A DNA stretch of 64,000 bases. Origin: Octopus bimaculoides. Its lineage: Eukaryota. The stretch lies in assembly GCF_001194135.2 (NCBI RefSeq), contig NC_069008.1:1688808-1752807 (forward strand), written 5' to 3'. Below the pieces are notes generated by a model that searched no databases, had not been told where the DNA came from, and saw nothing but the letters and a program-made list of their open reading frames with translations. This document shows positions 12,879 through 63,530 of the stretch, one piece after another. Position numbers and translations under genes: made by a program. How positions within the stretch are numbered: the stretch's first letter is position 1; every line of letters starts with the position of its first letter.

Positions 12879-13085
12879 TTAACCCTTTAGCATTCAGATT
12901 ATTCTGTCAAATGCAATGCTTGTTTATTCTCATTTCTTAAAATTAACCCTATATTATCTTATCTTATAGCTTTGAGACTTAAATGATGTAATTGTTTATT
13001 TTTAGAGGAAATGCGAGCGGCCAGATCTGATTAGTTTGAACCCAAAACAGGTCAGATATGACCAGTTTAATTACTAAAAGGTAAA
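12879..13085. mobile_element. piggyBac-type MITE
   Basis: Starts TTAA-CCCTTTAGCATTCAGATT; the right end is degenerate. Confidence 0.75.
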
Positions 13086-14172
13086 AAACAGGAATTTAGT
13101 ATCGTAGTACCAGGAGTGGAGAGGAGTAAAGTCTCAGGAGTGCTTGTATGAAAATGGTTGAACCACACCTTGCTGTCTTTAAAAGAAAGGAAATATGTCT
13201 GAAAAGAGGAGGTGGAATGCCTTTGGCCAGATGTCAGCCTTGTTAGAGCTGACTCGGGGTTAAACAACACAACATTGCTATGGTAAGACTATGTTGGTTT
13301 TTGTAGACTTCAGCCAGCTGTAATCCAGGAGGCATAAATTCTGAAGACATTCCAGGCATGACCATGCCATTTCTTTTATAGAAATAGCGTATCTAGGATA
13401 ACATTACTCAATGACTTAAATTTGATTTTTNNNNNNNNNNNNNNNNNNNNNNNNNNNNNNNNNNNNNNNNNNNNNNNNNNNNNNNNNNNNNNNNNNNNNN
13501 NNNNNNNNNNNNNNNNNNNNNNNNNNNNNNNNNNNNNNNNNNNNNNNNNNNNNNNNNNNNNNNNNNNNNNNNNNNNNNNNNNNNNNNNNNNNNNNNNNNN
13601 NNNNNNNNNNNNNNNNNNNNNNNNNNNNNNNNNNNNNNNNNNNNNNNNNNNNNNNNNNNNNNNNNNNNNNNNNNNNNNNNNNNNNNNNNNNNNNNNNNNN
13701 NNNNNNNNNNNNNNNNNNNNNNNNNNNNNNNNNNNNNNNNNNNNNNNNNNNNNNNNNNNNNNNNNNNNNNNNNNNNNNNNNNNNNNNNNNNNNNNNNNNN
13801 NNNNNNNNNNNNNNNNNNNNNNNNNNNNNNNNNNNNNNNNNNNNNNNNNNNNNNNNNNNNNNNNNNNNNNNNNNNNNNNNNNNNNNNNNNNNNNNNNNNN
13901 NNNNNNNNNNNNNNNNNNNNNNNNNNNNNNNNNNNNNNNNNNNNNNNNNNNNNNNNNNNNNNNNNNNNNNNNNNNNNNNNNNNNNNNNNNNNNNNNNNNN
14001 NNNNNNNNNNNNNNNNNNNNNNNNNNNNNNNNNNNNNNNNNNNNNNNNNNNNNNNNNNNNNNNNNNNNNNNNNNNNNNNNNNNNNNNNNNNNNNNNNNNN
14101 NNNNNNNNNNNNNNNNNNNNNNNNNNNNNNNNNNNNNNNNNNNNNNNNNNNNNNNNNNNNNNNNNNNNNNNN

Positions 14173-14215
<43 letters not shown>

Positions 14216-14304
14216 TACATATATGAATAACACAAAGATACTTATATTTGTATATACATACAGATACACATACATTACAAATTTATACAAACATACACAA
14301 ATAT

Positions 14305-14335
<31 letters not shown>

Positions 14336-14739
14336 CAAATGCATACATATATATGTGTGTGTATATATGTATATATTATAAACTAAATACAACTTTGCTG
14401 ATGTAATAAGAACAGATATGTTTGTGGTATTTTGGTTAATTCTAGCCCGCCACTCTACTTCCACACACACATTCCCCACCTACCCATCAACCATCTATGC
14501 TCCCTGCACTGCAGTGGTATCAGGTATACTCGCACACATACACACACTGTAAGAAATAGACCAACATGTAGGAGAAAGAGAGAGAGAGAGAGAGAGAGAA
14601 AAAAAAAAAACCAGGGTGTATAAAAATAAACTTAGGTGTAGATGAAAAAAAAAAAAGGAAAATAATTTAAAGAAAATGTCTGTTATAGTATTTTTTGGTA
14701 AATTCTTACCACCTTGCTAAAGTATCAGGTGTGTTTAGC

Positions 14740-14776
<37 letters not shown>

Positions 14777-15282
14777 ACACGCACATACATACACAGAGGC
14801 TATACAATTAGAATACAAATCCCTGAGAGAGTGTATATATAACAACTAATATTTATGGAACACTCTTTTTTTCTCTCTCTCTCTATATATATACACACAC
14901 ACATATATATATATACACACACATGAAAATCTTAACTTTTGCCTTTTGTTGTGGAAATATCAGGTCTGTATATGATATGTCCACACACATAGACATCGGT
15001 TATATTTGCCCAGACGTTATACATGCAATTCGGACTATGTAGGCATAACAGTGATGATAATAATTAGAAATGTAATAAAGACTGAACAAACAGGGTGTAT
15101 AAGCCAGGGTGTAGATGAAGGCATGTTGAACTTCATCCCTACCTCGCTGTAGCATCAGGTGTGTAGACACTACTTAGGCACATACATTACACATAATACC
15201 AGCCTAAACATATATAGACCAAGCAAATAAACAAGCGCGTATAATATAACCAGAGTGTTTTAATCTGTATAATATGCATATG

Positions 15283-15324
<42 letters not shown>

Positions 15325-15788
15325 NNNNNNNNNNNNNNNNNNNNNNNNNNNNNNNNNNNNNNNNNNNNNNNNNNNNNNNNNNNNNNNNNNNNNNNNNNNN
15401 NNNNNNNNNNNNNNNNNNNNNNNNNNNNNNNNNNNNNNNNNNNNNNNNNNNNNNNNNNNNNNNNNNNNNNNNNNNNNNNNNNNNNNNNNNNNNNNNNNNN
15501 NNNNNNNNNNNNNNNNNNNNNNNNNNNNNNNNNNNNNNNNNNNNNNNNNNNNNNNNNNNNNNNNNNNNNNNNNNNNNNNNNNNNNNNNNNNNNNNNNNNN
15601 NNNNNNNNNNNNNNNNNNNNNNNNNNNNNNNNNNNNNNNNNNNNNNNNNNNNNNNNNNGCGTATGGTAAATAAACAAGTGTCGTCGCCTGGTCCAGGAAT
15701 CGAAACCGCAATCTTGTGATCAAGAGTCCAACACCCTGACCATTAAGCCATGCACCTCCACTTGAGTGTATGTATGTATGTATGTATG

Positions 15789-15826
<38 letters not shown>

Positions 15827-15829
15827 TGG

Positions 15830-16100
15830 CGATTCTTTTCCTCTGTCTTCCTTTTCTCTTGGACTTTGCTCTGTCTCCTGTTTCCGAAGAAGAGCTTTGC
15901 TCGAAACATAAAACCACCTTTTTGCTCCTTCCCTGAGCATCTGCTAATACATTGCATGTAACACGTCCTCGTGTTGTTGTTTTTTTCTTGTGTTTGTTCT
16001 TCCCCTTTTTGGGATTTACTACATACACACACACATACACATCTGTGTTTTGTAGGACACAGGATAAACAGAACTCAAAACCTGAGTATATATTATTATT
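15830..16100 (+). mobile_element. Penelope-like element terminal (pLTR) fragment with a hammerhead-like motif at 15880-15914
   Basis: gtttCCGAAGAaGAGCtttGCTCGAAAcataaaac: stem II GAGC/GCTC, GAAA core and GTTT/AAAC stem I. Confidence 0.5.
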
Positions 16101-17573
16101 CCTGAGGTGGTGAGCTGGCAGAGTCGTGAGCACGTGGCACAAAATGCTTTGTAGCATATCATGTTTTTACATTCTGAGTTCAAATTCCTCTCAGGTTGAC
16201 TTTGCTTTGCATCCAAATGGGGTTGATGTAATCGACTATCCCTTTTCCACAAATTCCAGGCTTAGTGCCTTTAATAAAAAGGATTATTATTATTGTTATT
16301 TTTGTGCTAACTGACAAAAGTTATTGAAGTGACTCAAGGACCAAGAGTTTGGTGCACGGAACTTATGAAACTTGATAAGGGCCATAGGAGACGAAACTTT
16401 TGACCCTAGGGTTCTTTTGTAGCATTTGCTGATTAATTATTACAACTGCTTCAAATTTTGACACAAGGCCAGCAACTTTAGTGGGGGGAGGGAACAGATG
16501 GTTACATGGACCCAGTACATGATTGGTACTTTATTTCAAGGAACCTTGAAAGCATAAAAGACAAAGCTGACCTTGACAGGATTTGAACTCAGAATGTAAA
16601 CAGCTGGAAGAAATGCTGCAAAATATTCTGTCCTCTGACATGTTAACAATTCTGCCAGTTTGCAGCCTAAACAAGTGTAATAATGCATATGTGTATGTAC
16701 ATACATATATACATACATGCACCATGCACACACAGACATATACATACACATACATACATGCACCATGCACACAATACATTAAACACATTATAGAATCTAT
16801 ATACAAGTTCTACATACACACCCTCCACAAACCCATACCACAGACTAACACACCCACGGTGGAGTCTTCATGGTTGCTTGTCCTACCAAAAACTGGAAAT
16901 AGCAGCTAAATCTCCTCTGCATCACTCCTCCCACTGTTTCTTTTTAAATGGAAGGACACACTGGATAATGTAGTCCTAGATACATGATGTTTAGGGAAAT
17001 AATACCAGATGAAAAGGACACACCTGGAACGCCTTTGGAATATCAAGCTATACAATATCATAGAACTATACAGAATCTAAACACACACACACACACACAC
17101 ACACACAAGATCACATACTCTTTATATGCACACCAGATTACATATTCTATATATAAACACACTAGCAACAATTATCAGAAGAATAATTGTAGATCAATCA
17201 AACAGGGTGTATATAGATGAAAACCCAAGGTTGAGGAGAGAAAAATCTAAGCACCATTTGACTAAATGAAGAACGTGTCTGTTGCAATATTTCGTTATAT
17301 TCTTATCACCTTGCTGTAATATCAGGTATGTATACTACAAATATATATAGAGAGAGACTGTAATATACATATCACACAATGTAGACATAAATCATTACAT
17401 TCACAAATTATACACCCAAAGGCTGTATATCCTCAGTTTATACAATCAGAACAACAATAAAGAACAGGGTGTATAATATCAAGATGAGTCAAAGGTTTTC
17501 GGATTTTCACTGATCATTTTTGCCAACTTGTAACTTGACTCAACCTGGTGTTATAAAATGCTATTAAAAACAG

Positions 17574-17636
<63 letters not shown>

Positions 17637-17757
17637 ATTATATGTATTTATTTTATCCTAATTAATAATAATTCGGATAGAATAAATGGGTTAATAGAAA
17701 CCAGGGTAGCAAAGATCACAAAATAACTGGAATGGAATGAACGCATGTTATAACTGC

Positions 17758-17790
<33 letters not shown>

Positions 17791-18008
17791 TATAAAGAGA
17801 GAGAGAGATAGTATATACACATGACTATATAATAACTCTCATGAGATTATATCATATACACAGCAGCCTATGCTTCAGATGAATTATATACACCAATACG
17901 AAACTGGGTATGTGTGCATATACACACACACACACACACACACACATGTATATACACATAAATACACATGTAGATACACATGCGCACACACATACAACAA
18001 TAATACAT

Positions 18009-24470: not shown

Positions 24471-26357
24471 ACACCTCACTGTGTGCTGCTGTGCAGAGAT
24501 CTATTTCTTTTTCTTCCTGCGAAGATAATTGAAAGTTATGATGATGACGATGATGACGATAGTGGTGGTGGTTATGGCCGACAATTATATGCTTAGCTGC
24601 ATAAGTGCATGCATACACATACAGGTGTGTGTGTGCACGTGTGTACTAGCATACCCACATAAGCAGGTAAATACTTAAAGACGTAGAATATATATATATA
24701 TAAATAATATATATATATCAATATATAACACGAATACGTACACTGATAGAGTTTTGGGGGAGTTACGTAAAACACGCACACTCACACACAGCTAAGTCGT
24801 TACAATGATAAGAATGATAAAACTGGCAGAGTTTCAAAAAACACATACATACAGACAATAGCATTTGCAGACATCATATGGGTGTATCACACACACACAC
24901 ACAGAACAGTATCTCAGATGTACATATATACAGATAACAACTCTTGCAGACAAACACACACACACACACACACACATAAAATACACAGATACTAACTCGT
25001 ATAAAACAACTACAGACGTTAGTGTTACAAATAAGACTATCTCTCTCCCTGTCTCTCGCACACAGAGAGCTATTATAGTCGAATTCATTGGTCTGTGCCC
25101 ATACTGGGCACCGCTTTTCAAGGGGTTTATTTAATTATGTTGATCTCAGTTTGACGTCTCGGTTTCACCTCGTAAACATTCTACAAGTGTCCCAAGTTTC
25201 AAAGTGTTTCGTTAAGAAAATACTGGTTCCCCCGTTTTGAACAATACTAGTGTGATGGGAGATAACTCTGCCACACCTAAATACTTGTTCAATGTCCTGG
25301 AGGCGGGTGGTTTTCCTCACACACACACACACACGCGCAGAGTTTCAAGTATTGGATCATGGCCATGCTGGGGCACCTCATCGACCTCGGTTTGTTATTT
25401 ATTTTAAAGCCGGGTACTTAAACGTTTACTTAAATGAAAGAAAATTACCGGAGAACTTNNNNNNNNNNNNNNNNNNNNNNNNNNNNNNNNNNNNNNNNNN
25501 NNNNNNNNNNNNNNNNNNNNNNNNNNNNNNNNNNNNNNNNNNNNNNNNNNNNNNNNNNNNNNNNNNNNNNNNNNNNNNNNNNNNNNNNNNNNNNNNNNNN
25601 NNNNNNNNNNNNNNNNNNNNNNNNNNNNNNNNNNNNNNNNNNNNNNNNNNNNNNNNNNNNNNNNNNNNNNNNNNNNNNNNNNNNNNNNNNNNNNNNNNNN
25701 NNNNNNNNNNNNNNNNNNNNNNNNNNNNNNNNNNNNNNNNNNNNNNNNNNNNNNNNNNNNNNNNNNNNNNNNNNNNNNNNNNNNNNNNNNNNNNNNNNNN
25801 NNNNNNNNNNNNNNNNNNNNNNNNNNNNNNNNNNNNNNNNNNNNNNNNNNNNNNNNNNNNNNNNNNNNNNNNNNNNNNNNNNNNNNNNNNNNNNNNNNNN
25901 NNNNNNNNNNNNNNNNNNNNNNNNNNNNNNNNNNNNNNNNNNNNNNNNNNNNNNNNNNNNNNNNNNNNNNNNNNNNNNNNNNNNNNNNNNNNNNNNNNNN
26001 NNNNNNNNNNNNNNNNNNNNNNNNNNNNNNNNNNNNNNNNNNNNNNNNNNNNNNNNNNNNNNNNNNNNNNNNNNNNNNNNNNNNNNNNNNNNNNNNNNNN
26101 NNNNNNNNNNNNNNNNNNNNNNNNNNNNNNNNNNNNNNNNNNNNNNNNNNNNNNNNNNNNNNNNNNNNNNNNNNNNNNNNNNNNNNNNNNNNNNNAGAGA
26201 GAGAGAGGCAGAAACAACATCAGTATAAAACCCCCGTTGCTAAATCCATTTACTGGCAGGGACTGTGGGGATAATGATAACGGTGATGACAGTTACAACG
26301 TAACTGTCACCATGACATGAATATAGTCTAAGGCCTGATGGACACAACGGTGGGATC

Positions 26358-26690
26358 TTGTTCAAAACGGGGGCACCAGTATTTTCTTAACGAAACGCTT
26401 TGAAACTTGGGACACTGGTAGAATGTGTCATATAAAACATCTTTTTCTCTTAGTCTTCTTAACAAAAAAAACGCACATCGCAAGTTATTCCATGTTAAAG
26501 TTGTCGTATTTCTGTAAATTCAACCAATGACTGACGTCCATTCAGTCGAATAACAGTAAATGCTGACTACGTAAACAAACGATTCTGGCGGTGATAAAAT
26601 TATTATTTCCTTGTCAAAAAATCGCTGAAGCATATTGGCAGTAGCTAATAAACCTTTCTAGGATCTATTTTAAAACGGGGGCACCAGAAA
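26358..26690. mobile_element. Unclassified DNA-transposon-like fragment; its first 69 bp have an inverted copy at 25176-25244
   Basis: 66/69 identity between 26358-26426 and the reverse complement of 25176-25244; aaaacgggggcaccag recurs directly near 26672. Confidence 0.55.
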
Positions 26691-60975: not shown

Positions 60976-61313
60976 AAAAAAATTAGAACATTTTGTGTCT
61001 TGTATATTCTATTGCTGATAAATTTTAACAAAAAAACCTTATATGGAACCCGGTTGAGAACCACTGAGCTAAACAAACACTATATTTGATATTAAATCAA
61101 AAAGGGGTTTCATCAACACTCTCAGGGCAAACACTTGTTGCATGTTGTTTAGGTCTGGGTTAAGCCCAATCCAAGCTGACCTTGGATCAGAAACATTCCT
61201 GCATAGGAACACGCATACATGAAACAGTAGGATGACTCAAAGGAGACTTGGCTGCTACTTCTTACCAAGTCAAGCTAGCATCTAGCCCTTCCTTCGTATC
61301 AAATATATAAAGT

Positions 61314-61819
61314 ATGCACGCATGCGTGTGCATATACATACATACATATACATATATACATACATATATACATACATATATGCATACATATATGCATACA
61401 TATATGCATACATACATACATATATGCATACATACATACACATATGCATACATATATGCATACATACATACACATATGCATACATACATACACATATGCA
61501 TACATACATACACATATGCATACATACATACACATACATACATACACATATGCATACATACATACACATACATACATACACATATATACATACATACATA
61601 CACATATATACATACATACACATATATACATACATACATATGTATACATACATACATACACATATATACATACACATATATATATACATACATACACATA
61701 TATATATACATACATACACATATATATATACATACATACATACACATATATATATACATACATACATACACATATATATATACATACATACATACACATA
61801 TATATATACATACATACAT

Positions 61820-61850
<31 letters not shown>
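61314..61850. repeat. Compound (TACA)n/(TA)n/(CATATG) microsatellite
   Basis: Direct reading; explains the stacked ORFs in this region. Confidence 0.95.
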
Positions 61851-62981
61851 GGTGGGTTCAGGAACGTTGTACAAAGTTTGCTTCCCAACCACATGGCTCT
61901 GGGTTCAGTCCCACGGAATGTCACTTCTACTATAACCTCAGTTCGGCCAAATCCACTCATAAGAGTGGTGTGGTAGGCAGGAACTGAAAGAAGCACGCTG
62001 TGTGTGTGTGTGTACCTTTGTGTCCCTGTAACTGAACGATTCAGCAAAAGAGACTTAGAAGAAAAAAAAAAAACGTGTACTGGGGTCAATTCATTCCACT
62101 TAAAATCTTTTCAATGTTCCTCAGTATGGCAGCAGTCTAATGACTGAAAAACATGTAAACGATACAGAATATACACCTAAACCTATGCGTGTGTGCGTGT
62201 GTGTGTACGCGCGCGCGCTATATGTTCACGCAAACACACATGTAAGATAGTAGGCTAATTGAAGGTAAATTTGTCTGCTATTTCTAGCAGGGTCAAGTAG
62301 CCTCTCTCTCGTTGGCTCGAGGTCAAAAGATGGAAGGTTTTTAAGCGACAGATTAAGGAAATGGCCTCTATTTTCGTCGAGTCTTGTAGCAGCAAATTGG
62401 CCTGGCACTTGTTTGTGCTGCTGCTTTTAATTGTGGGTCAGCGAGCAGCTGGAATATTATTTGATGGCCGCTGTTCTTCTTCCCACACTCAAAACTTGCC
62501 TTGTTTTTTTTTTTGACAAGTGTAAATAAGTAAATAGGCCAAAGAAAAAGCAAAAAAAAAAAAAAAAAAAAGAAGGGGGTGATGGTGGTTTAGAAAAGTA
62601 TAATAGGGGAAATGAAGAAAATAAAACTGAAGTATTTTCGGGCATCTGAGGCGATAATGGCTATTCATTGTTAGCATAATTACTTTATTAAATACTAAAA
62701 ATAAAAAGAATATTCTCTTTCTCTCTTTCATATAAATATGTGGTTACTGGGGCCCTGTTTTTAAGAAAAGGGAGTATAATTGTAACATTTAGGCCCAAGA
62801 CATACACACACACATATATACTAAAAGTATGTACATACACGGCATTACGTATGCTGTATATACATACGTACACACACAGACAGACATACATGTAAACCTA
62901 CAGACAAATAGTTGCGTACAAGTTATTTCTACACGACAATATTGAGTGTTACATATTTTCATATCAAATGGCTATATCATT

Positions 62982-63530
62982 TATCTTTTACATGCTTCAG
63001 TCATTAGACTGAGGTCTTGAAGTATTTTAGTCGAATGAATCGACTCCAATAATTATTATTTTATAAGCTTGGTATTTATACTATCGGTTTCCTTGTCGAA
63101 CCGGTAAGTTACGTGGACGCAAACACACCAACACTGTTTATCAAGAAGTGGTGGGGGAACAAAACAGACAAAAACATCGCGCGCGCACAACCACACACAG
63201 GCTTTTTTCAGTTTCCGTCGGTAATTTTTCAGATTAACAACACCCGCACGATCTTCATTCACTAGGGTGTTAGGGTTAGGGACGTAATTCCCTAACCCTA
63301 AAACCCTAACCGTAACCCTAAACCTGACCCTAACACCCTAGTGAAGATCGTGCGGGTGTTAATCTGAAAAATTACCTTTCCGTCTACCAAATCTATTCAC
63401 AAGTATTTAGTCGCCCGAGGCTGCAATAGAAGATACTTGCTGCAATAGAAGATACTTGCTCAAGGTGCCATGCAGTAAGACTGAACCCGGAATCAAGTGG
63501 TTGGAAAGAAAGATTCCTTAACACAGCAAC
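62982..63530 (-). mobile_element. SINE family A interrupted by a MITE at 63220-63376
   Basis: The family A segment tcagtttccgtc|taccaaat is split by the insertion. Confidence 0.8.
63220..63376. mobile_element. Merlin-like MITE (157 bp) with 8-bp TSD and inward-facing telomeric-type repeats
   Basis: TSD TTTCCGTC at 63212-63219 and 63377-63384; ~50-bp TIRs starting GGTAA; core ttagggttaggg-acgtaatt-ccctaaccctaa.... Confidence 0.85.

What the first reader, a model, noticed from the sequence alone, without database searches (positions are those of the whole stretch)
63220..63376. Merlin-like MITE whose core is a head-to-head telomeric repeat junction
Seen in sequence: a 157-bp insertion in a SINE, flanked by a perfect 8-bp duplication (TTTCCGTC). 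Its ~50-bp TIRs are identical except for two short duplications (AAC, TTCA) in the left arm. The TIRs run into TTAGGG-type repeats on the left and CCCTAA-type repeats on the right, which meet at a short acgtaatt spacer. Established: 8-9-bp TSDs with GG-terminal TIRs (GGNRM) characterise the Merlin/IS1016 superfamily, TTAGGG is the common mollusc telomere repeat, and (TTAGGG)n-(CCCTAA)n is the geometry of telomere fusions. Inference: this is a recently active non-autonomous DNA transposon spreading interstitial telomere-like sites. These could recruit telomere-binding proteins or form a foldback hairpin.
Basis: partly seen in the sequence, partly recalled or inferred. Interest (0 to 1): 0.75.

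Follow-up and report, generated by a model that had tools for sequence, protein, structure and literature searches.

The report
Octopus foldback MITE with telomere-repeat core
This is one copy of a roughly thousand-copy family of small palindromic DNA transposons in octopus genomes whose inner arms are telomere-type TTAGGG repeats; it moves like an ordinary cut-and-paste element, but it scatters head-to-head telomere-like sites through the genome.

Summary
A 157-bp near-perfect palindrome (63220-63376) sits in a SINE. It is flanked by a perfect 8-bp duplication (TTTCCGTC), and 21 other SINE copies in the window show the uninterrupted site.

It is not a one-off or a fusion scar. Raw reads and contigs show on the order of 1,000-2,000 arms with the same 35-nt terminus, always followed by telomere-like hexamers, in three octopus species labels. 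The AAC and TTCA extras are private to this copy. The centre (TTAGGG-ACGGAATT-CCCTAA, or AATT alone) is shared by many copies. Array length varies, and a one-sided variant exists.

A 3.1-kb foldback element in O. sinensis has a terminus 34/41 identical and also an 8-bp duplication. The family is therefore best read as a miniature foldback-style non-autonomous transposon whose arm repeats are telomere hexamers.

Merlin is plausible but unproven. Octopus Merlin elements have GG ends and 8-bp duplications. None of the seven Merlin loci examined carries these termini, and no autonomous partner was found.

"Recently active" is only partly supported.

One run holds a 136-bp deletion form of this locus.

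Verdict: real, an ordinary mechanism with an unusual cargo. It is a new variant of a known kind, of moderate interest.

The parts
63212..63219 (.). Left copy of the 8-bp target-site duplication TTTCCGTC
   Evidence: D12. The site is single in 21 other SINE copies and in the SINE consensus read from raw reads.
63220..63261 (+). Left terminal inverted repeat, unique part (35 nt of family sequence plus private tandem duplications AAC at 63239-41 and TTCA at 63258-61)
   Evidence: In one search practically all family depth lacks the AAC ('left out 3' at 63236), and alignments stop at 63257 and continue CTAGGGTG. In one search about half of the ~25 reads laid there lack both extras.
63262..63281 (+). 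G-strand telomere-like array CTAGGGTGTTAGGGTTAGGG (three units)
   Evidence: Family contigs continue CTAGGGTGTTAGGGTTAGGG... after the terminus in all four runs.
63282..63289 (.). Central spacer ACGTAATT of the palindrome (ACGGAATT in most reads that cover it; AATT alone in some copies)
   Evidence: 63285 T>G in 128 of 147 reads (X23) and 132 of 161 (X24); five X4 contigs read ...TTAGGGACGGAATT|CCCTAA. X18 and X19 contigs read TTAGGGAATTCC.
63290..63341 (+). C-strand telomere-like array (about 8 degenerate CCCTAA units, including CCGTAA, AAACCCTAA and CCTGAC)
   Evidence: At 63322 (A>C) and 63326 (G>A) the commonest family base restores CCCTAA. Many 'goes back' joints and inserted CCCTAA units show that array length varies between copies.
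63342..63376 (-). Right terminal inverted repeat, unique part (35 nt, ends ...AAAAATTACC)
   Evidence: I2, I3. Raw-read depth is about 1,240-1,350 here. Hundreds of reads and dozens of contigs diverge into unrelated sequence exactly after 63376.
63377..63384 (.). Right copy of the target-site duplication TTTCCGTC
   Evidence: D12.
63090..63500 (-). Host SINE copy interrupted by the element (tRNA-like head at the right-hand end, read on the minus strand)
   Evidence: Alignment with four other SINE copies of the window. Very high read and contig depth on the flanks.
63244..63379 (.). 136 bp missing in the only form of this locus found in run X7 (keeps 24 nt of the left terminus including the private AAC; 3-nt microhomology CCG)
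   Evidence: one 297-nt contig, depth 6.15, no mismatches, 208 and 89 nt on the two sides. The joint was not listed for any of the other DNA-type runs laid. Every joint was shown only for X4, X12, X13, X14, X18, X19 and X20; the lists for X1, X2, X3, X5 and X10 were truncated.

Best explanation
What it is. The 157-bp sequence is one copy of a non-autonomous cut-and-paste DNA transposon family (a MITE) built like a miniature foldback element. Each arm has a 35-nt unique terminus beginning 5'-GG, followed by a tandem array of telomere-type hexamers. The two arms meet head to head at a very short palindromic centre.

How it moves. A transposase supplied in trans recognises the termini, excises the element and inserts it at an 8-bp staggered cut, which gives the 8-bp duplication. 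This step is inferred from anatomy.

Which transposase. It is most likely of the Merlin/IS1595 kind (my estimate about 0.45). This too is inferred, from GG ends, 8-bp duplications and the presence of Merlins with the same two features in octopus genomes.

The telomere-like arrays. They are cargo that occupies the place of foldback arm repeats. They expand and contract by slippage. They were present in the founder of the family and were not made at this locus.

Consequences.
- The family places on the order of a thousand short head-to-head (TTAGGG)n-(CCCTAA)n sites in the genome.
- Each site can fold into a ~70-bp hairpin as single-stranded DNA or RNA.
For: - Insertion and TSD.
- Defined outer ends: in every run, reads and contigs diverge into unrelated AT-rich sequence exactly after 63376.
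- Copy number from raw reads: depth on the terminus is about 1,250-1,350 in 1.93 Gb sampled per run. That is roughly 1,800 arms if the genome is about 2.7 Gb (my assumption).
- Copy number from exact words: 32-mers of the right terminus stand at depth 1,575 and 1,375 against 6.8 for the single-copy locus contig in X12, so about 200-230 arms are identical over 32 nt.
- Terminus and hexamers are linked family-wide: depth runs continuously from the terminus into the array, and contigs continue CTAGGGTGTTAGGG....
- Shared centre.
- Variable arrays and a one-sided variant (30-nt terminus joined directly to CCCTAA units): joint 63290/63347 in 34-43 reads, and loose ends after 63252.
- Same family in organisms B and C at comparable depth.
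- Related element L001:161-3272 in O. sinensis: terminus 34/41 identical, 8-bp TSD AAAAAAAT, arms 94.8% complementary over ~1,440 nt, arm repeats of ~125 bp, no ORF.
- Octopus Merlin elements: GG termini and 8-bp TSDs GCAAATCT, GAAACTTT, CAAGGCTT and CAAAAGAG/CAGAAGAG.
- Target preference: the consensus of the first 8 outward flank letters is AAAATTTY / GAAATTTC, a palindromic 8-mer like the Merlin TSD GAAACTTT (agreement only ~0.4).
Against: - No autonomous element with these termini was found, so the transposase is unknown.
- The octopus Merlin termini examined are unrelated in sequence, and none of seven Merlin loci has this terminus within 10 kb.
- Foldback architecture is classically associated with superfamilies other than Merlin (my own knowledge).
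- TSD length rests on two elements only: this copy and L001.
- The two copy-number estimates differ about ten-fold. Summed contig depth gives 13,000-18,000, which I think is inflated by overlapping unitigs.
- A recurrent flank (...GTGGTCCGAAAAACGGGTT), which by my estimate sits beyond the terminus in about a quarter of raw reads, is unexplained.
Confidence: 0.8

Rival explanations
1. It is the same kind of element, a foldback-style MITE, but mobilised by a transposase of another superfamily that makes 8-bp duplications. Candidates are Mutator-like/Foldback, P-like, hAT, or an undescribed group.
For: - The whole-element palindrome and the 3.1-kb relative with tandem-repeat arms are foldback architecture.
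- The seven Merlin loci examined do not carry these termini.
Against: - The ends begin GGTAA, not the YARNG of hAT or the CA of P elements (sequence; the motifs are from my own knowledge).
- Both measured TSDs are exactly 8 bp, whereas Mutator and Foldback elements usually give 9 or more (my own knowledge).
- Octopus Merlins share both the GG ends and the 8-bp TSD.
Confidence: 0.35
2. The telomeric core arose when the centre of a palindromic element broke (hairpin or cruciform cleavage). Telomerase added TTAGGG to both 3' ends and the ends were rejoined. Alternatively, one healed arm was copied by foldback synthesis. This happened once in the founder, or recurrently in palindromic elements. 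It is an account of origin, compatible with the best explanation.
For: - Each half reads 5'-terminus-(TTAGGG)n-3', as a telomerase-extended end would.
- The centre is a perfect or near-perfect palindrome: TTAGGGAATTCCCTAA.
- An unrelated ~730-bp palindromic element (L004:5565-6294) also has head-to-head degenerate telomere-like arrays at its centre.
Against: - The arrays start at the same nucleotide in both arms and share variant units (TTACGG/CCGTAA). This fits arm duplication and slippage without any telomerase step.
- There is no direct evidence of breakage or healing.
- Only two families were seen.
Confidence: 0.15
3. A locus-specific interstitial telomeric site: a relic of a telomere-telomere fusion, or a telomerase insertion during break repair at this place.
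For: Only the (TTAGGG)n-(CCCTAA)n geometry.
Against: - It lies inside a TIR element with a TSD, within a SINE.
- The same terminus-array-centre arrangement occurs in on the order of 1,000 places and in three species labels.
Confidence: 0.02
4. An assembly artefact, that is a chimeric join of repeats.
For: The window is a gap-rich scaffold with many runs of N.
Against: Exact contigs across the left and/or right junction in nine runs (X1, X2, X3, X4, X5, X10, X12, X13, X14) from at least seven samples and three studies. Three RNA-type runs also hold locus contigs.
Confidence: 0.01

Closest known systems
Merlin superfamily (IS1016/IS1595-like DDE transposons) and their MITEs
   Same: 5'-GG termini and an 8-bp TSD, the structural hallmarks given in PMC8101967. 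Octopus genomes hold many DDE_Tnp_IS1595 genes. The Merlin elements checked here have GG ends and 8-bp TSDs.
   Different: - No sequence similarity to the octopus Merlin termini examined.
- No partner transposase was found.
- The whole-element palindrome with tandem-repeat arms is not a described Merlin trait, as far as I know.
Foldback elements (Drosophila FB, Galileo and foldback-like elements of other animals and plants; my own knowledge)
   Same: - The arms consist of a short unique terminus followed by tandem repeats of variable number.
- The arms meet with little or no loop.
- Most copies are non-autonomous, hairpin-forming and prone to deletion.
- The 3.1-kb relative L001:161-3272 is a textbook foldback structure.
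   Different: - It is far smaller (157 bp).
- The arm repeat is the 6-bp telomere motif.
- The TSD is 8 bp rather than the 9 bp (FB) or 7 bp (Galileo) that I recall.
Telomere-bearing transposons of ciliates (TBE1/Tec, Tel-1; my own knowledge)
   Same: DNA transposons that carry the host's telomeric repeat within their inverted termini.
   Different: - There the repeats are at the extreme outer ends, and the elements are large and autonomous (Tc1/mariner-like).
- Here the repeats are internal, head to head, in a MITE of an animal.
Short interstitial telomeric sequences inserted at repaired breaks (PMC7215372 abstract) and fusion-type ITS
   Same: Short (TTAGGG)n tracts at non-terminal sites. 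The head-to-head geometry matches fusion junctions.
   Different: Those are single-locus events without TIRs or TSDs. Here the tract is part of a mobile unit copied about a thousand times.

Membership tests
MITE / non-autonomous TIR (class II) transposon | Terminal inverted repeats at both ends | tested here: met
   Arms are identical apart from two private tandem duplications.
MITE / non-autonomous TIR (class II) transposon | Target-site duplication of fixed length, with a matching empty site | tested here: met
   Perfect 8-bp TTTCCGTC. There are 21 uninterrupted paralogous sites. The related element L001 also has an 8-bp TSD. Only these two elements could be measured.
MITE / non-autonomous TIR (class II) transposon | Short, no coding capacity, many dispersed copies with different flanks | tested here: met
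   157 bp with no ORF beyond chance. About 1,000-2,000 arms by raw-read depth. Flanks diverge exactly after 63376 with consensus agreement of only ~0.4.
Merlin superfamily | Termini begin 5'-GG | tested here: met
   GGTAATTT... / ...AAATTACC. The criterion is from PMC8101967.
Merlin superfamily | TSD of 8 or 9 bp | tested here: met
   8 bp here and in L001:161-3272.
Merlin superfamily | Termini shared with an autonomous element that encodes a DDE_Tnp_IS1595 transposase | tested here: inconclusive
   Seven octopus Merlin gene loci (L001-L010, 10 kb each side) hold no terminus like this one. The Merlin termini found are GGCGATGTTTCG.... The tools give no whole-genome DNA search.
hAT superfamily | 8-bp TSD with short TIRs beginning YARNG (my own knowledge) | tested here: not met
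   The TSD length fits, but the termini begin GGTAA. The flank consensus GAAATTTC does not fit nTnnnnAn.
Foldback-type elements (an architecture, not a transposase family) | Long inverted arms made of tandem repeats behind a short unique terminus, with variable repeat number and a small or absent loop | tested here: met
   - Hexamer arrays lie behind a 35-nt terminus.
- Array length varies between copies.
- The centre is 4-8 nt.
- The relative L001:161-3272 has ~125-bp arm repeats.
Telomere-fusion or repair-derived interstitial telomeric site | A single-locus event without a mobile-element context | tested here: not met
   It is flanked by TIRs and a TSD, and the same junction is present in many copies and three species labels.

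The most novel reading that the evidence does not exclude
The telomere repeats are not passive cargo. Palindromic transposons in octopus genomes repeatedly acquire head-to-head telomeric arrays, because their centres break and are healed by telomerase before rejoining. Alternatively, the arrays are kept because bound telomere proteins protect or help the element. On that reading the family would be a natural reporter of telomerase action at internal breaks, and about a thousand dispersed sites could bind shelterin-like proteins.
Probability: 0.1. Interest if true: 0.8.

Novelty: new variant of a known kind. Interest (0 to 1): 0.45.

Why it matters
- A mobile element that copies a head-to-head telomere motif to about a thousand places changes how interstitial telomeric sites in cephalopod genomes should be read. 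Most would be transposon cargo, not relics of chromosome fusions.
- Each site is a potential fragile site. It combines a palindrome with G-rich repeats, and one run here holds a 136-bp deletion form.
- Each site is a possible binding site for telomere proteins.
- When transcribed, each site gives a ~70-bp double-stranded RNA hairpin, in an animal group known for heavy RNA editing.
- The family also gives a handle for finding a still unidentified active transposase in octopus.

Tried and rejected
1. Searching the 5.8-billion-protein collection with a translation of the terminus plus repeats, to reach other copies through called ORFs. Only two unrelated LG/PN-repeat ORFs came back.
2. Exact-pattern scans of the metagenome contigs (twice) and the viral contigs for the terminus. 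No matches.
3. Asking for PacBio runs. None were served.
4. A coverage calibration on 38000-43999.
5. Asking which runs hold the fetched octopus loci, to decode the species labels.
6. Scanning about 200 kb of O. bimaculoides, O. sinensis and O. vulgaris DNA fetched around Merlin genes for further copies. No copies of the family itself were found, only the 3.1-kb relative.
7. Testing for an orthologous insertion in organisms B and C. It was not resolved. X18 has a single-copy-depth contig across the right junction with 3 mismatches. The only left-flank contigs listed there are paralogous SINE copies that stop at 63219/63220.
8. Rfam. Only microsatellite look-alikes of miRNA families, nothing on the element.
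9. Six literature searches. No paper in the library describes a MITE or foldback element with a telomeric core.
10. Treating summed contig depth as copy number (13,000-18,000). I rejected this as inflated by overlapping unitigs and preferred the raw-read and exact-word estimates.

Full report

Yes, at the stated coordinates and in every detail.

- The element occupies 63220-63376 (157 bp).
- Its right arm, reverse-complemented, is GGTAATTTTTCAGATTAAC-ACCCGCACGATCTTCA-CTAGGGTGTTAGGGT. The left arm is the same with a tandem AAC and a tandem TTCA added.
- The unique termini run into CTAGGGTGTTAGGGTTAGGG on the left and about eight degenerate CCCTAA units on the right. They meet at ACGTAATT.
- TTTCCGTC flanks both ends (D12).
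- The host is a SINE. The uninterrupted site TTTCAG|TTTCCGTC|TACCAAATC occurs 21 more times in the window, against none expected. A multiple alignment shows the host copy interrupted by exactly 165 bp, the element plus one duplicated octamer.
- In raw reads, more than 500 reads per run join ...GGGCTTCTTTCAG directly to 63377.
- The palindrome folds at -56 kcal/mol, z = -15.8.
- Exact contigs cross the left and/or right junction in nine DNA-type runs of organism A (X1, X2, X3, X4, X5, X10, X12, X13, X14), from at least seven samples and three studies. It is not an assembly artefact.

**2. Is it a family?**

Only this copy lies in the window, but read data show a large family.

- In 1.93 Gb of raw reads per run, depth on the right terminus is about 1,250-1,350. 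With an assumed 2.7-Gb genome that is roughly 1,800 arms.
- Exact 32-mers of the terminus stand at depth 1,575 and 1,375 against 6.8 for the locus-specific contig in X12. About 200-230 arms are therefore identical to this copy over 32 nt.
- This copy carries the minority base at 63346.
- Summed contig depths give 13,000-18,000. Overlapping unitigs are counted several times in such sums, so I treat that as an upper bound.
- In every run, reads and contigs diverge into unrelated AT-rich sequence exactly after 63376. That fixes the element's end.
- Reads of both arms pile on the right arm, because the left arm carries the two extras. When only the left arm is offered, practically all family depth lacks the AAC, and alignments break before the TTCA and continue CTAGGGTG. 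Both duplications are private to this copy.

**3. Is the telomeric core a family feature?**

Yes.

- Depth runs continuously from the terminus into the hexamers, and contigs in four runs continue CTAGGGTGTTAGGGTTAGGG.
- The commonest family base restores CCCTAA at 63322 and 63326.
- About 150 reads per run cover the spacer, and about 80-90% of them read ACGGAATT.
- Five X4 contigs read ACGGTTACGGTTAGGGACGGAATT|CCCTAA.
- Contigs of organisms B and C read TTAGGGAATTCC. That gives a centre, TTAGGGAATTCCCTAA, that is a perfect palindrome.
- Array length varies widely: there are many 'goes back' joints and inserted CCCTAA units.
- A sizeable subfamily has a 30-nt terminus joined directly to CCCTAA units, so it has only one array orientation (34-43 reads).
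- The family stands at comparable depth in organisms B and C.

**4. Relatives elsewhere**

I took an Octopus bimaculoides Merlin protein from the supplement of PMC8101967. With it I retrieved octopus DDE_Tnp_IS1595 proteins and their loci.

*A foldback relative.* By luck, one O. sinensis locus holds a 3.1-kb element, L001:161-3272.
- Its 41-nt terminus GGTAAAATTACAGATTATCACCCCCACGATTTTCACTAAGA is 34/41 identical to our family consensus.
- It is flanked by the 8-bp duplication AAAAAAAT.
- Its halves are 94.8% complementary over ~1,440 nt.
- It has no ORF.
- Behind the terminus it carries ~125-bp tandem repeats that echo the inner terminus motif.
- It is a classical foldback structure. Our element is its miniature, with telomere hexamers where the relative has 125-bp repeats.

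*Octopus Merlin elements.* They are real and informative.
- An 8.7-kb element (L001:4266-12986, also in L002 and L003) and a 470-bp derivative (L005:10779-11248) begin GGCGATGTTTCG.
- All have 8-bp duplications: GCAAATCT, GAAACTTT, CAAGGCTT and CAAAAGAG/CAGAAGAG.
- Their termini are unrelated to ours.
- None of the seven Merlin loci has our terminus within 10 kb.

**5. How it most likely works**

*Shown:* TIRs, an 8-bp TSD, a defined end, high copy number with different flanks, and no coding capacity. This is a MITE.

*Inferred:*
- A trans-acting DDE transposase binds the 35-nt termini and makes 8-bp staggered target cuts.
- The first eight outward flank letters have the weak palindromic consensus AAAATTTY / GAAATTTC. 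That fits an 8-bp symmetric target and resembles the Merlin TSD GAAACTTT. Agreement is only ~0.4.

*Superfamily.* I put Merlin at about 0.45. GG ends and the 8-bp TSD meet the published structural criteria, and octopus Merlins share them. Other superfamilies together get about 0.35. hAT fails on the termini. The defining test, a partner transposase, could not be run.

*The arrays.* They behave as foldback arm repeats. Their identical starting point in both arms and their shared variant units (TTACGG/CCGTAA) fit duplication of one arm plus slippage.

*Origin.* An origin by telomerase healing of a broken palindrome centre is possible but untested. A second, unrelated ~730-bp palindromic element (L004:5565-6294) also has head-to-head telomere-like arrays at its centre. 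Arm fragments of it lie in this window beside an N gap. That keeps the idea alive.

**6. Age and activity**

- This copy has two private indels. It departs from the commonest family base at 63285, 63322 and 63326, and it carries the minority base at 63346.
- The family is shared by three species labels.
- On the other hand, roughly half of the family's contig depth on the terminus remains at 98% identity or more (the 98% run compared with the 94% run, in different runs). The family may therefore have been active not long ago.
- Orthology of this insertion in organism B is unresolved.

**7. Other observations at the locus**

- Three RNA-type runs hold locus-specific contigs through the left junction at depth 3-5. 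They hold the family terminus at depth 500-1,400. Copies are therefore transcribed, probably as parts of longer transcripts.
- Run X7, whose library type is not on record, holds only a form lacking 63244-63379. It keeps 24 nt of the left terminus including the private AAC, and has a 3-nt microhomology. This is either a secondary deletion allele, as expected from palindrome instability or abortive excision, or a polymerase jump across the hairpin.

**8. Comparison with what is known, and verdict**

- The mechanism is ordinary: a MITE with foldback architecture.
- What is unusual is the cargo. The host's telomere motif sits in head-to-head arrays and is copied about a thousand times.
- Six searches of the paper library found no description of such an element. 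Repbase and Dfam could not be consulted.
- The nearest precedents I know are the telomere-bearing transposons of ciliates. They differ in where the repeats sit and in element type.
- I rate it a new variant of a known kind, interest 0.45.

Noticed in passing
L001:161-3272 (O. sinensis CM016860.1): A 3.1-kb fully palindromic foldback element. Its terminus is 34/41 identical to this family's. It has the 8-bp TSD AAAAAAAT, ~125-bp subterminal tandem repeats and no ORF.
   Followed up: yes
L004:5565-6294 (O. bimaculoides); window 25176-25220 and 26382-26565: A second, unrelated ~730-bp palindromic repeat (termini GAYAACGTTRGGATC). Its centre holds head-to-head degenerate telomere-like arrays (5897-5965 G-strand, 5985-6028 C-strand). 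Arm fragments of the same family lie in the window on either side of an N gap.
   Followed up: partly
L005:7397-7490 (O. sinensis): A one-sided degenerate (TTAGGG)n tract of ~95 bp. It is preceded by AT-rich sequence with a faint resemblance to the MITE terminus (GATTCTGAAAAAATTTAC).
   Followed up: no
window 63244-63379: Run X7 (library type unknown) holds only a form of this locus lacking these 136 bp, with a 3-nt microhomology. The joint is absent from X4, X12, X13, X14, X18, X19 and X20, where all joints were shown, and it was not listed for the other runs. It is either a real deletion allele or a polymerase jump across the hairpin.
   Followed up: partly
L001:4266-12986, L002, L003; L005:10779-11248: An 8.7-kb octopus Merlin element with ~355-bp TIRs beginning GGCGATGTTTCG and 8-bp TSDs, and a 470-bp non-autonomous derivative with the same termini.
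   Followed up: partly
beyond window 63376 (read data only): In both raw-read runs the consensus of about 500-600 reads that continue past the element's end is AAAATTTTTTTGTGGTCCGAAAAACGGGTT (agreement ~0.44). An RNA run shows ...AAAAAACGGGTT. I take this to mean that a sizeable subset of copies sits in one recurrent context. The motif is absent from the window and from the fetched loci.
   Followed up: partly
window 63235 and 62999: RNA-type runs show T>C at 63235 (X11, inside the left arm) and A>G at 62999 (X6), each in the single locus contig. They could be individual SNPs or A-to-I editing of the hairpin.
   Followed up: no
window 63233: A contig with an extra G after 63233 carries 29-46% of the depth there in X1, X2 and X4. 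It is either a heterozygous indel in the left terminus or a near-identical paralogue.
   Followed up: no
window 63420-63457: A perfect 19-bp tandem duplication (GCTGCAATAGAAGATACTT x2) in the host SINE, just right of the insertion.
   Followed up: no
window 61290-61930 and 62180-62250: Dozens of sub-threshold Rfam 'mir-297/mir-466/mir-1277' matches fall on TG/TA microsatellite. They are composition artefacts, not miRNA genes.
   Followed up: no
window, many places (e.g. 1300-2150, 2560-3100, 13430-14170, 25459-26195): The window is a gap-rich scaffold. The N runs I looked at are bordered by microsatellites or repeats.
   Followed up: no
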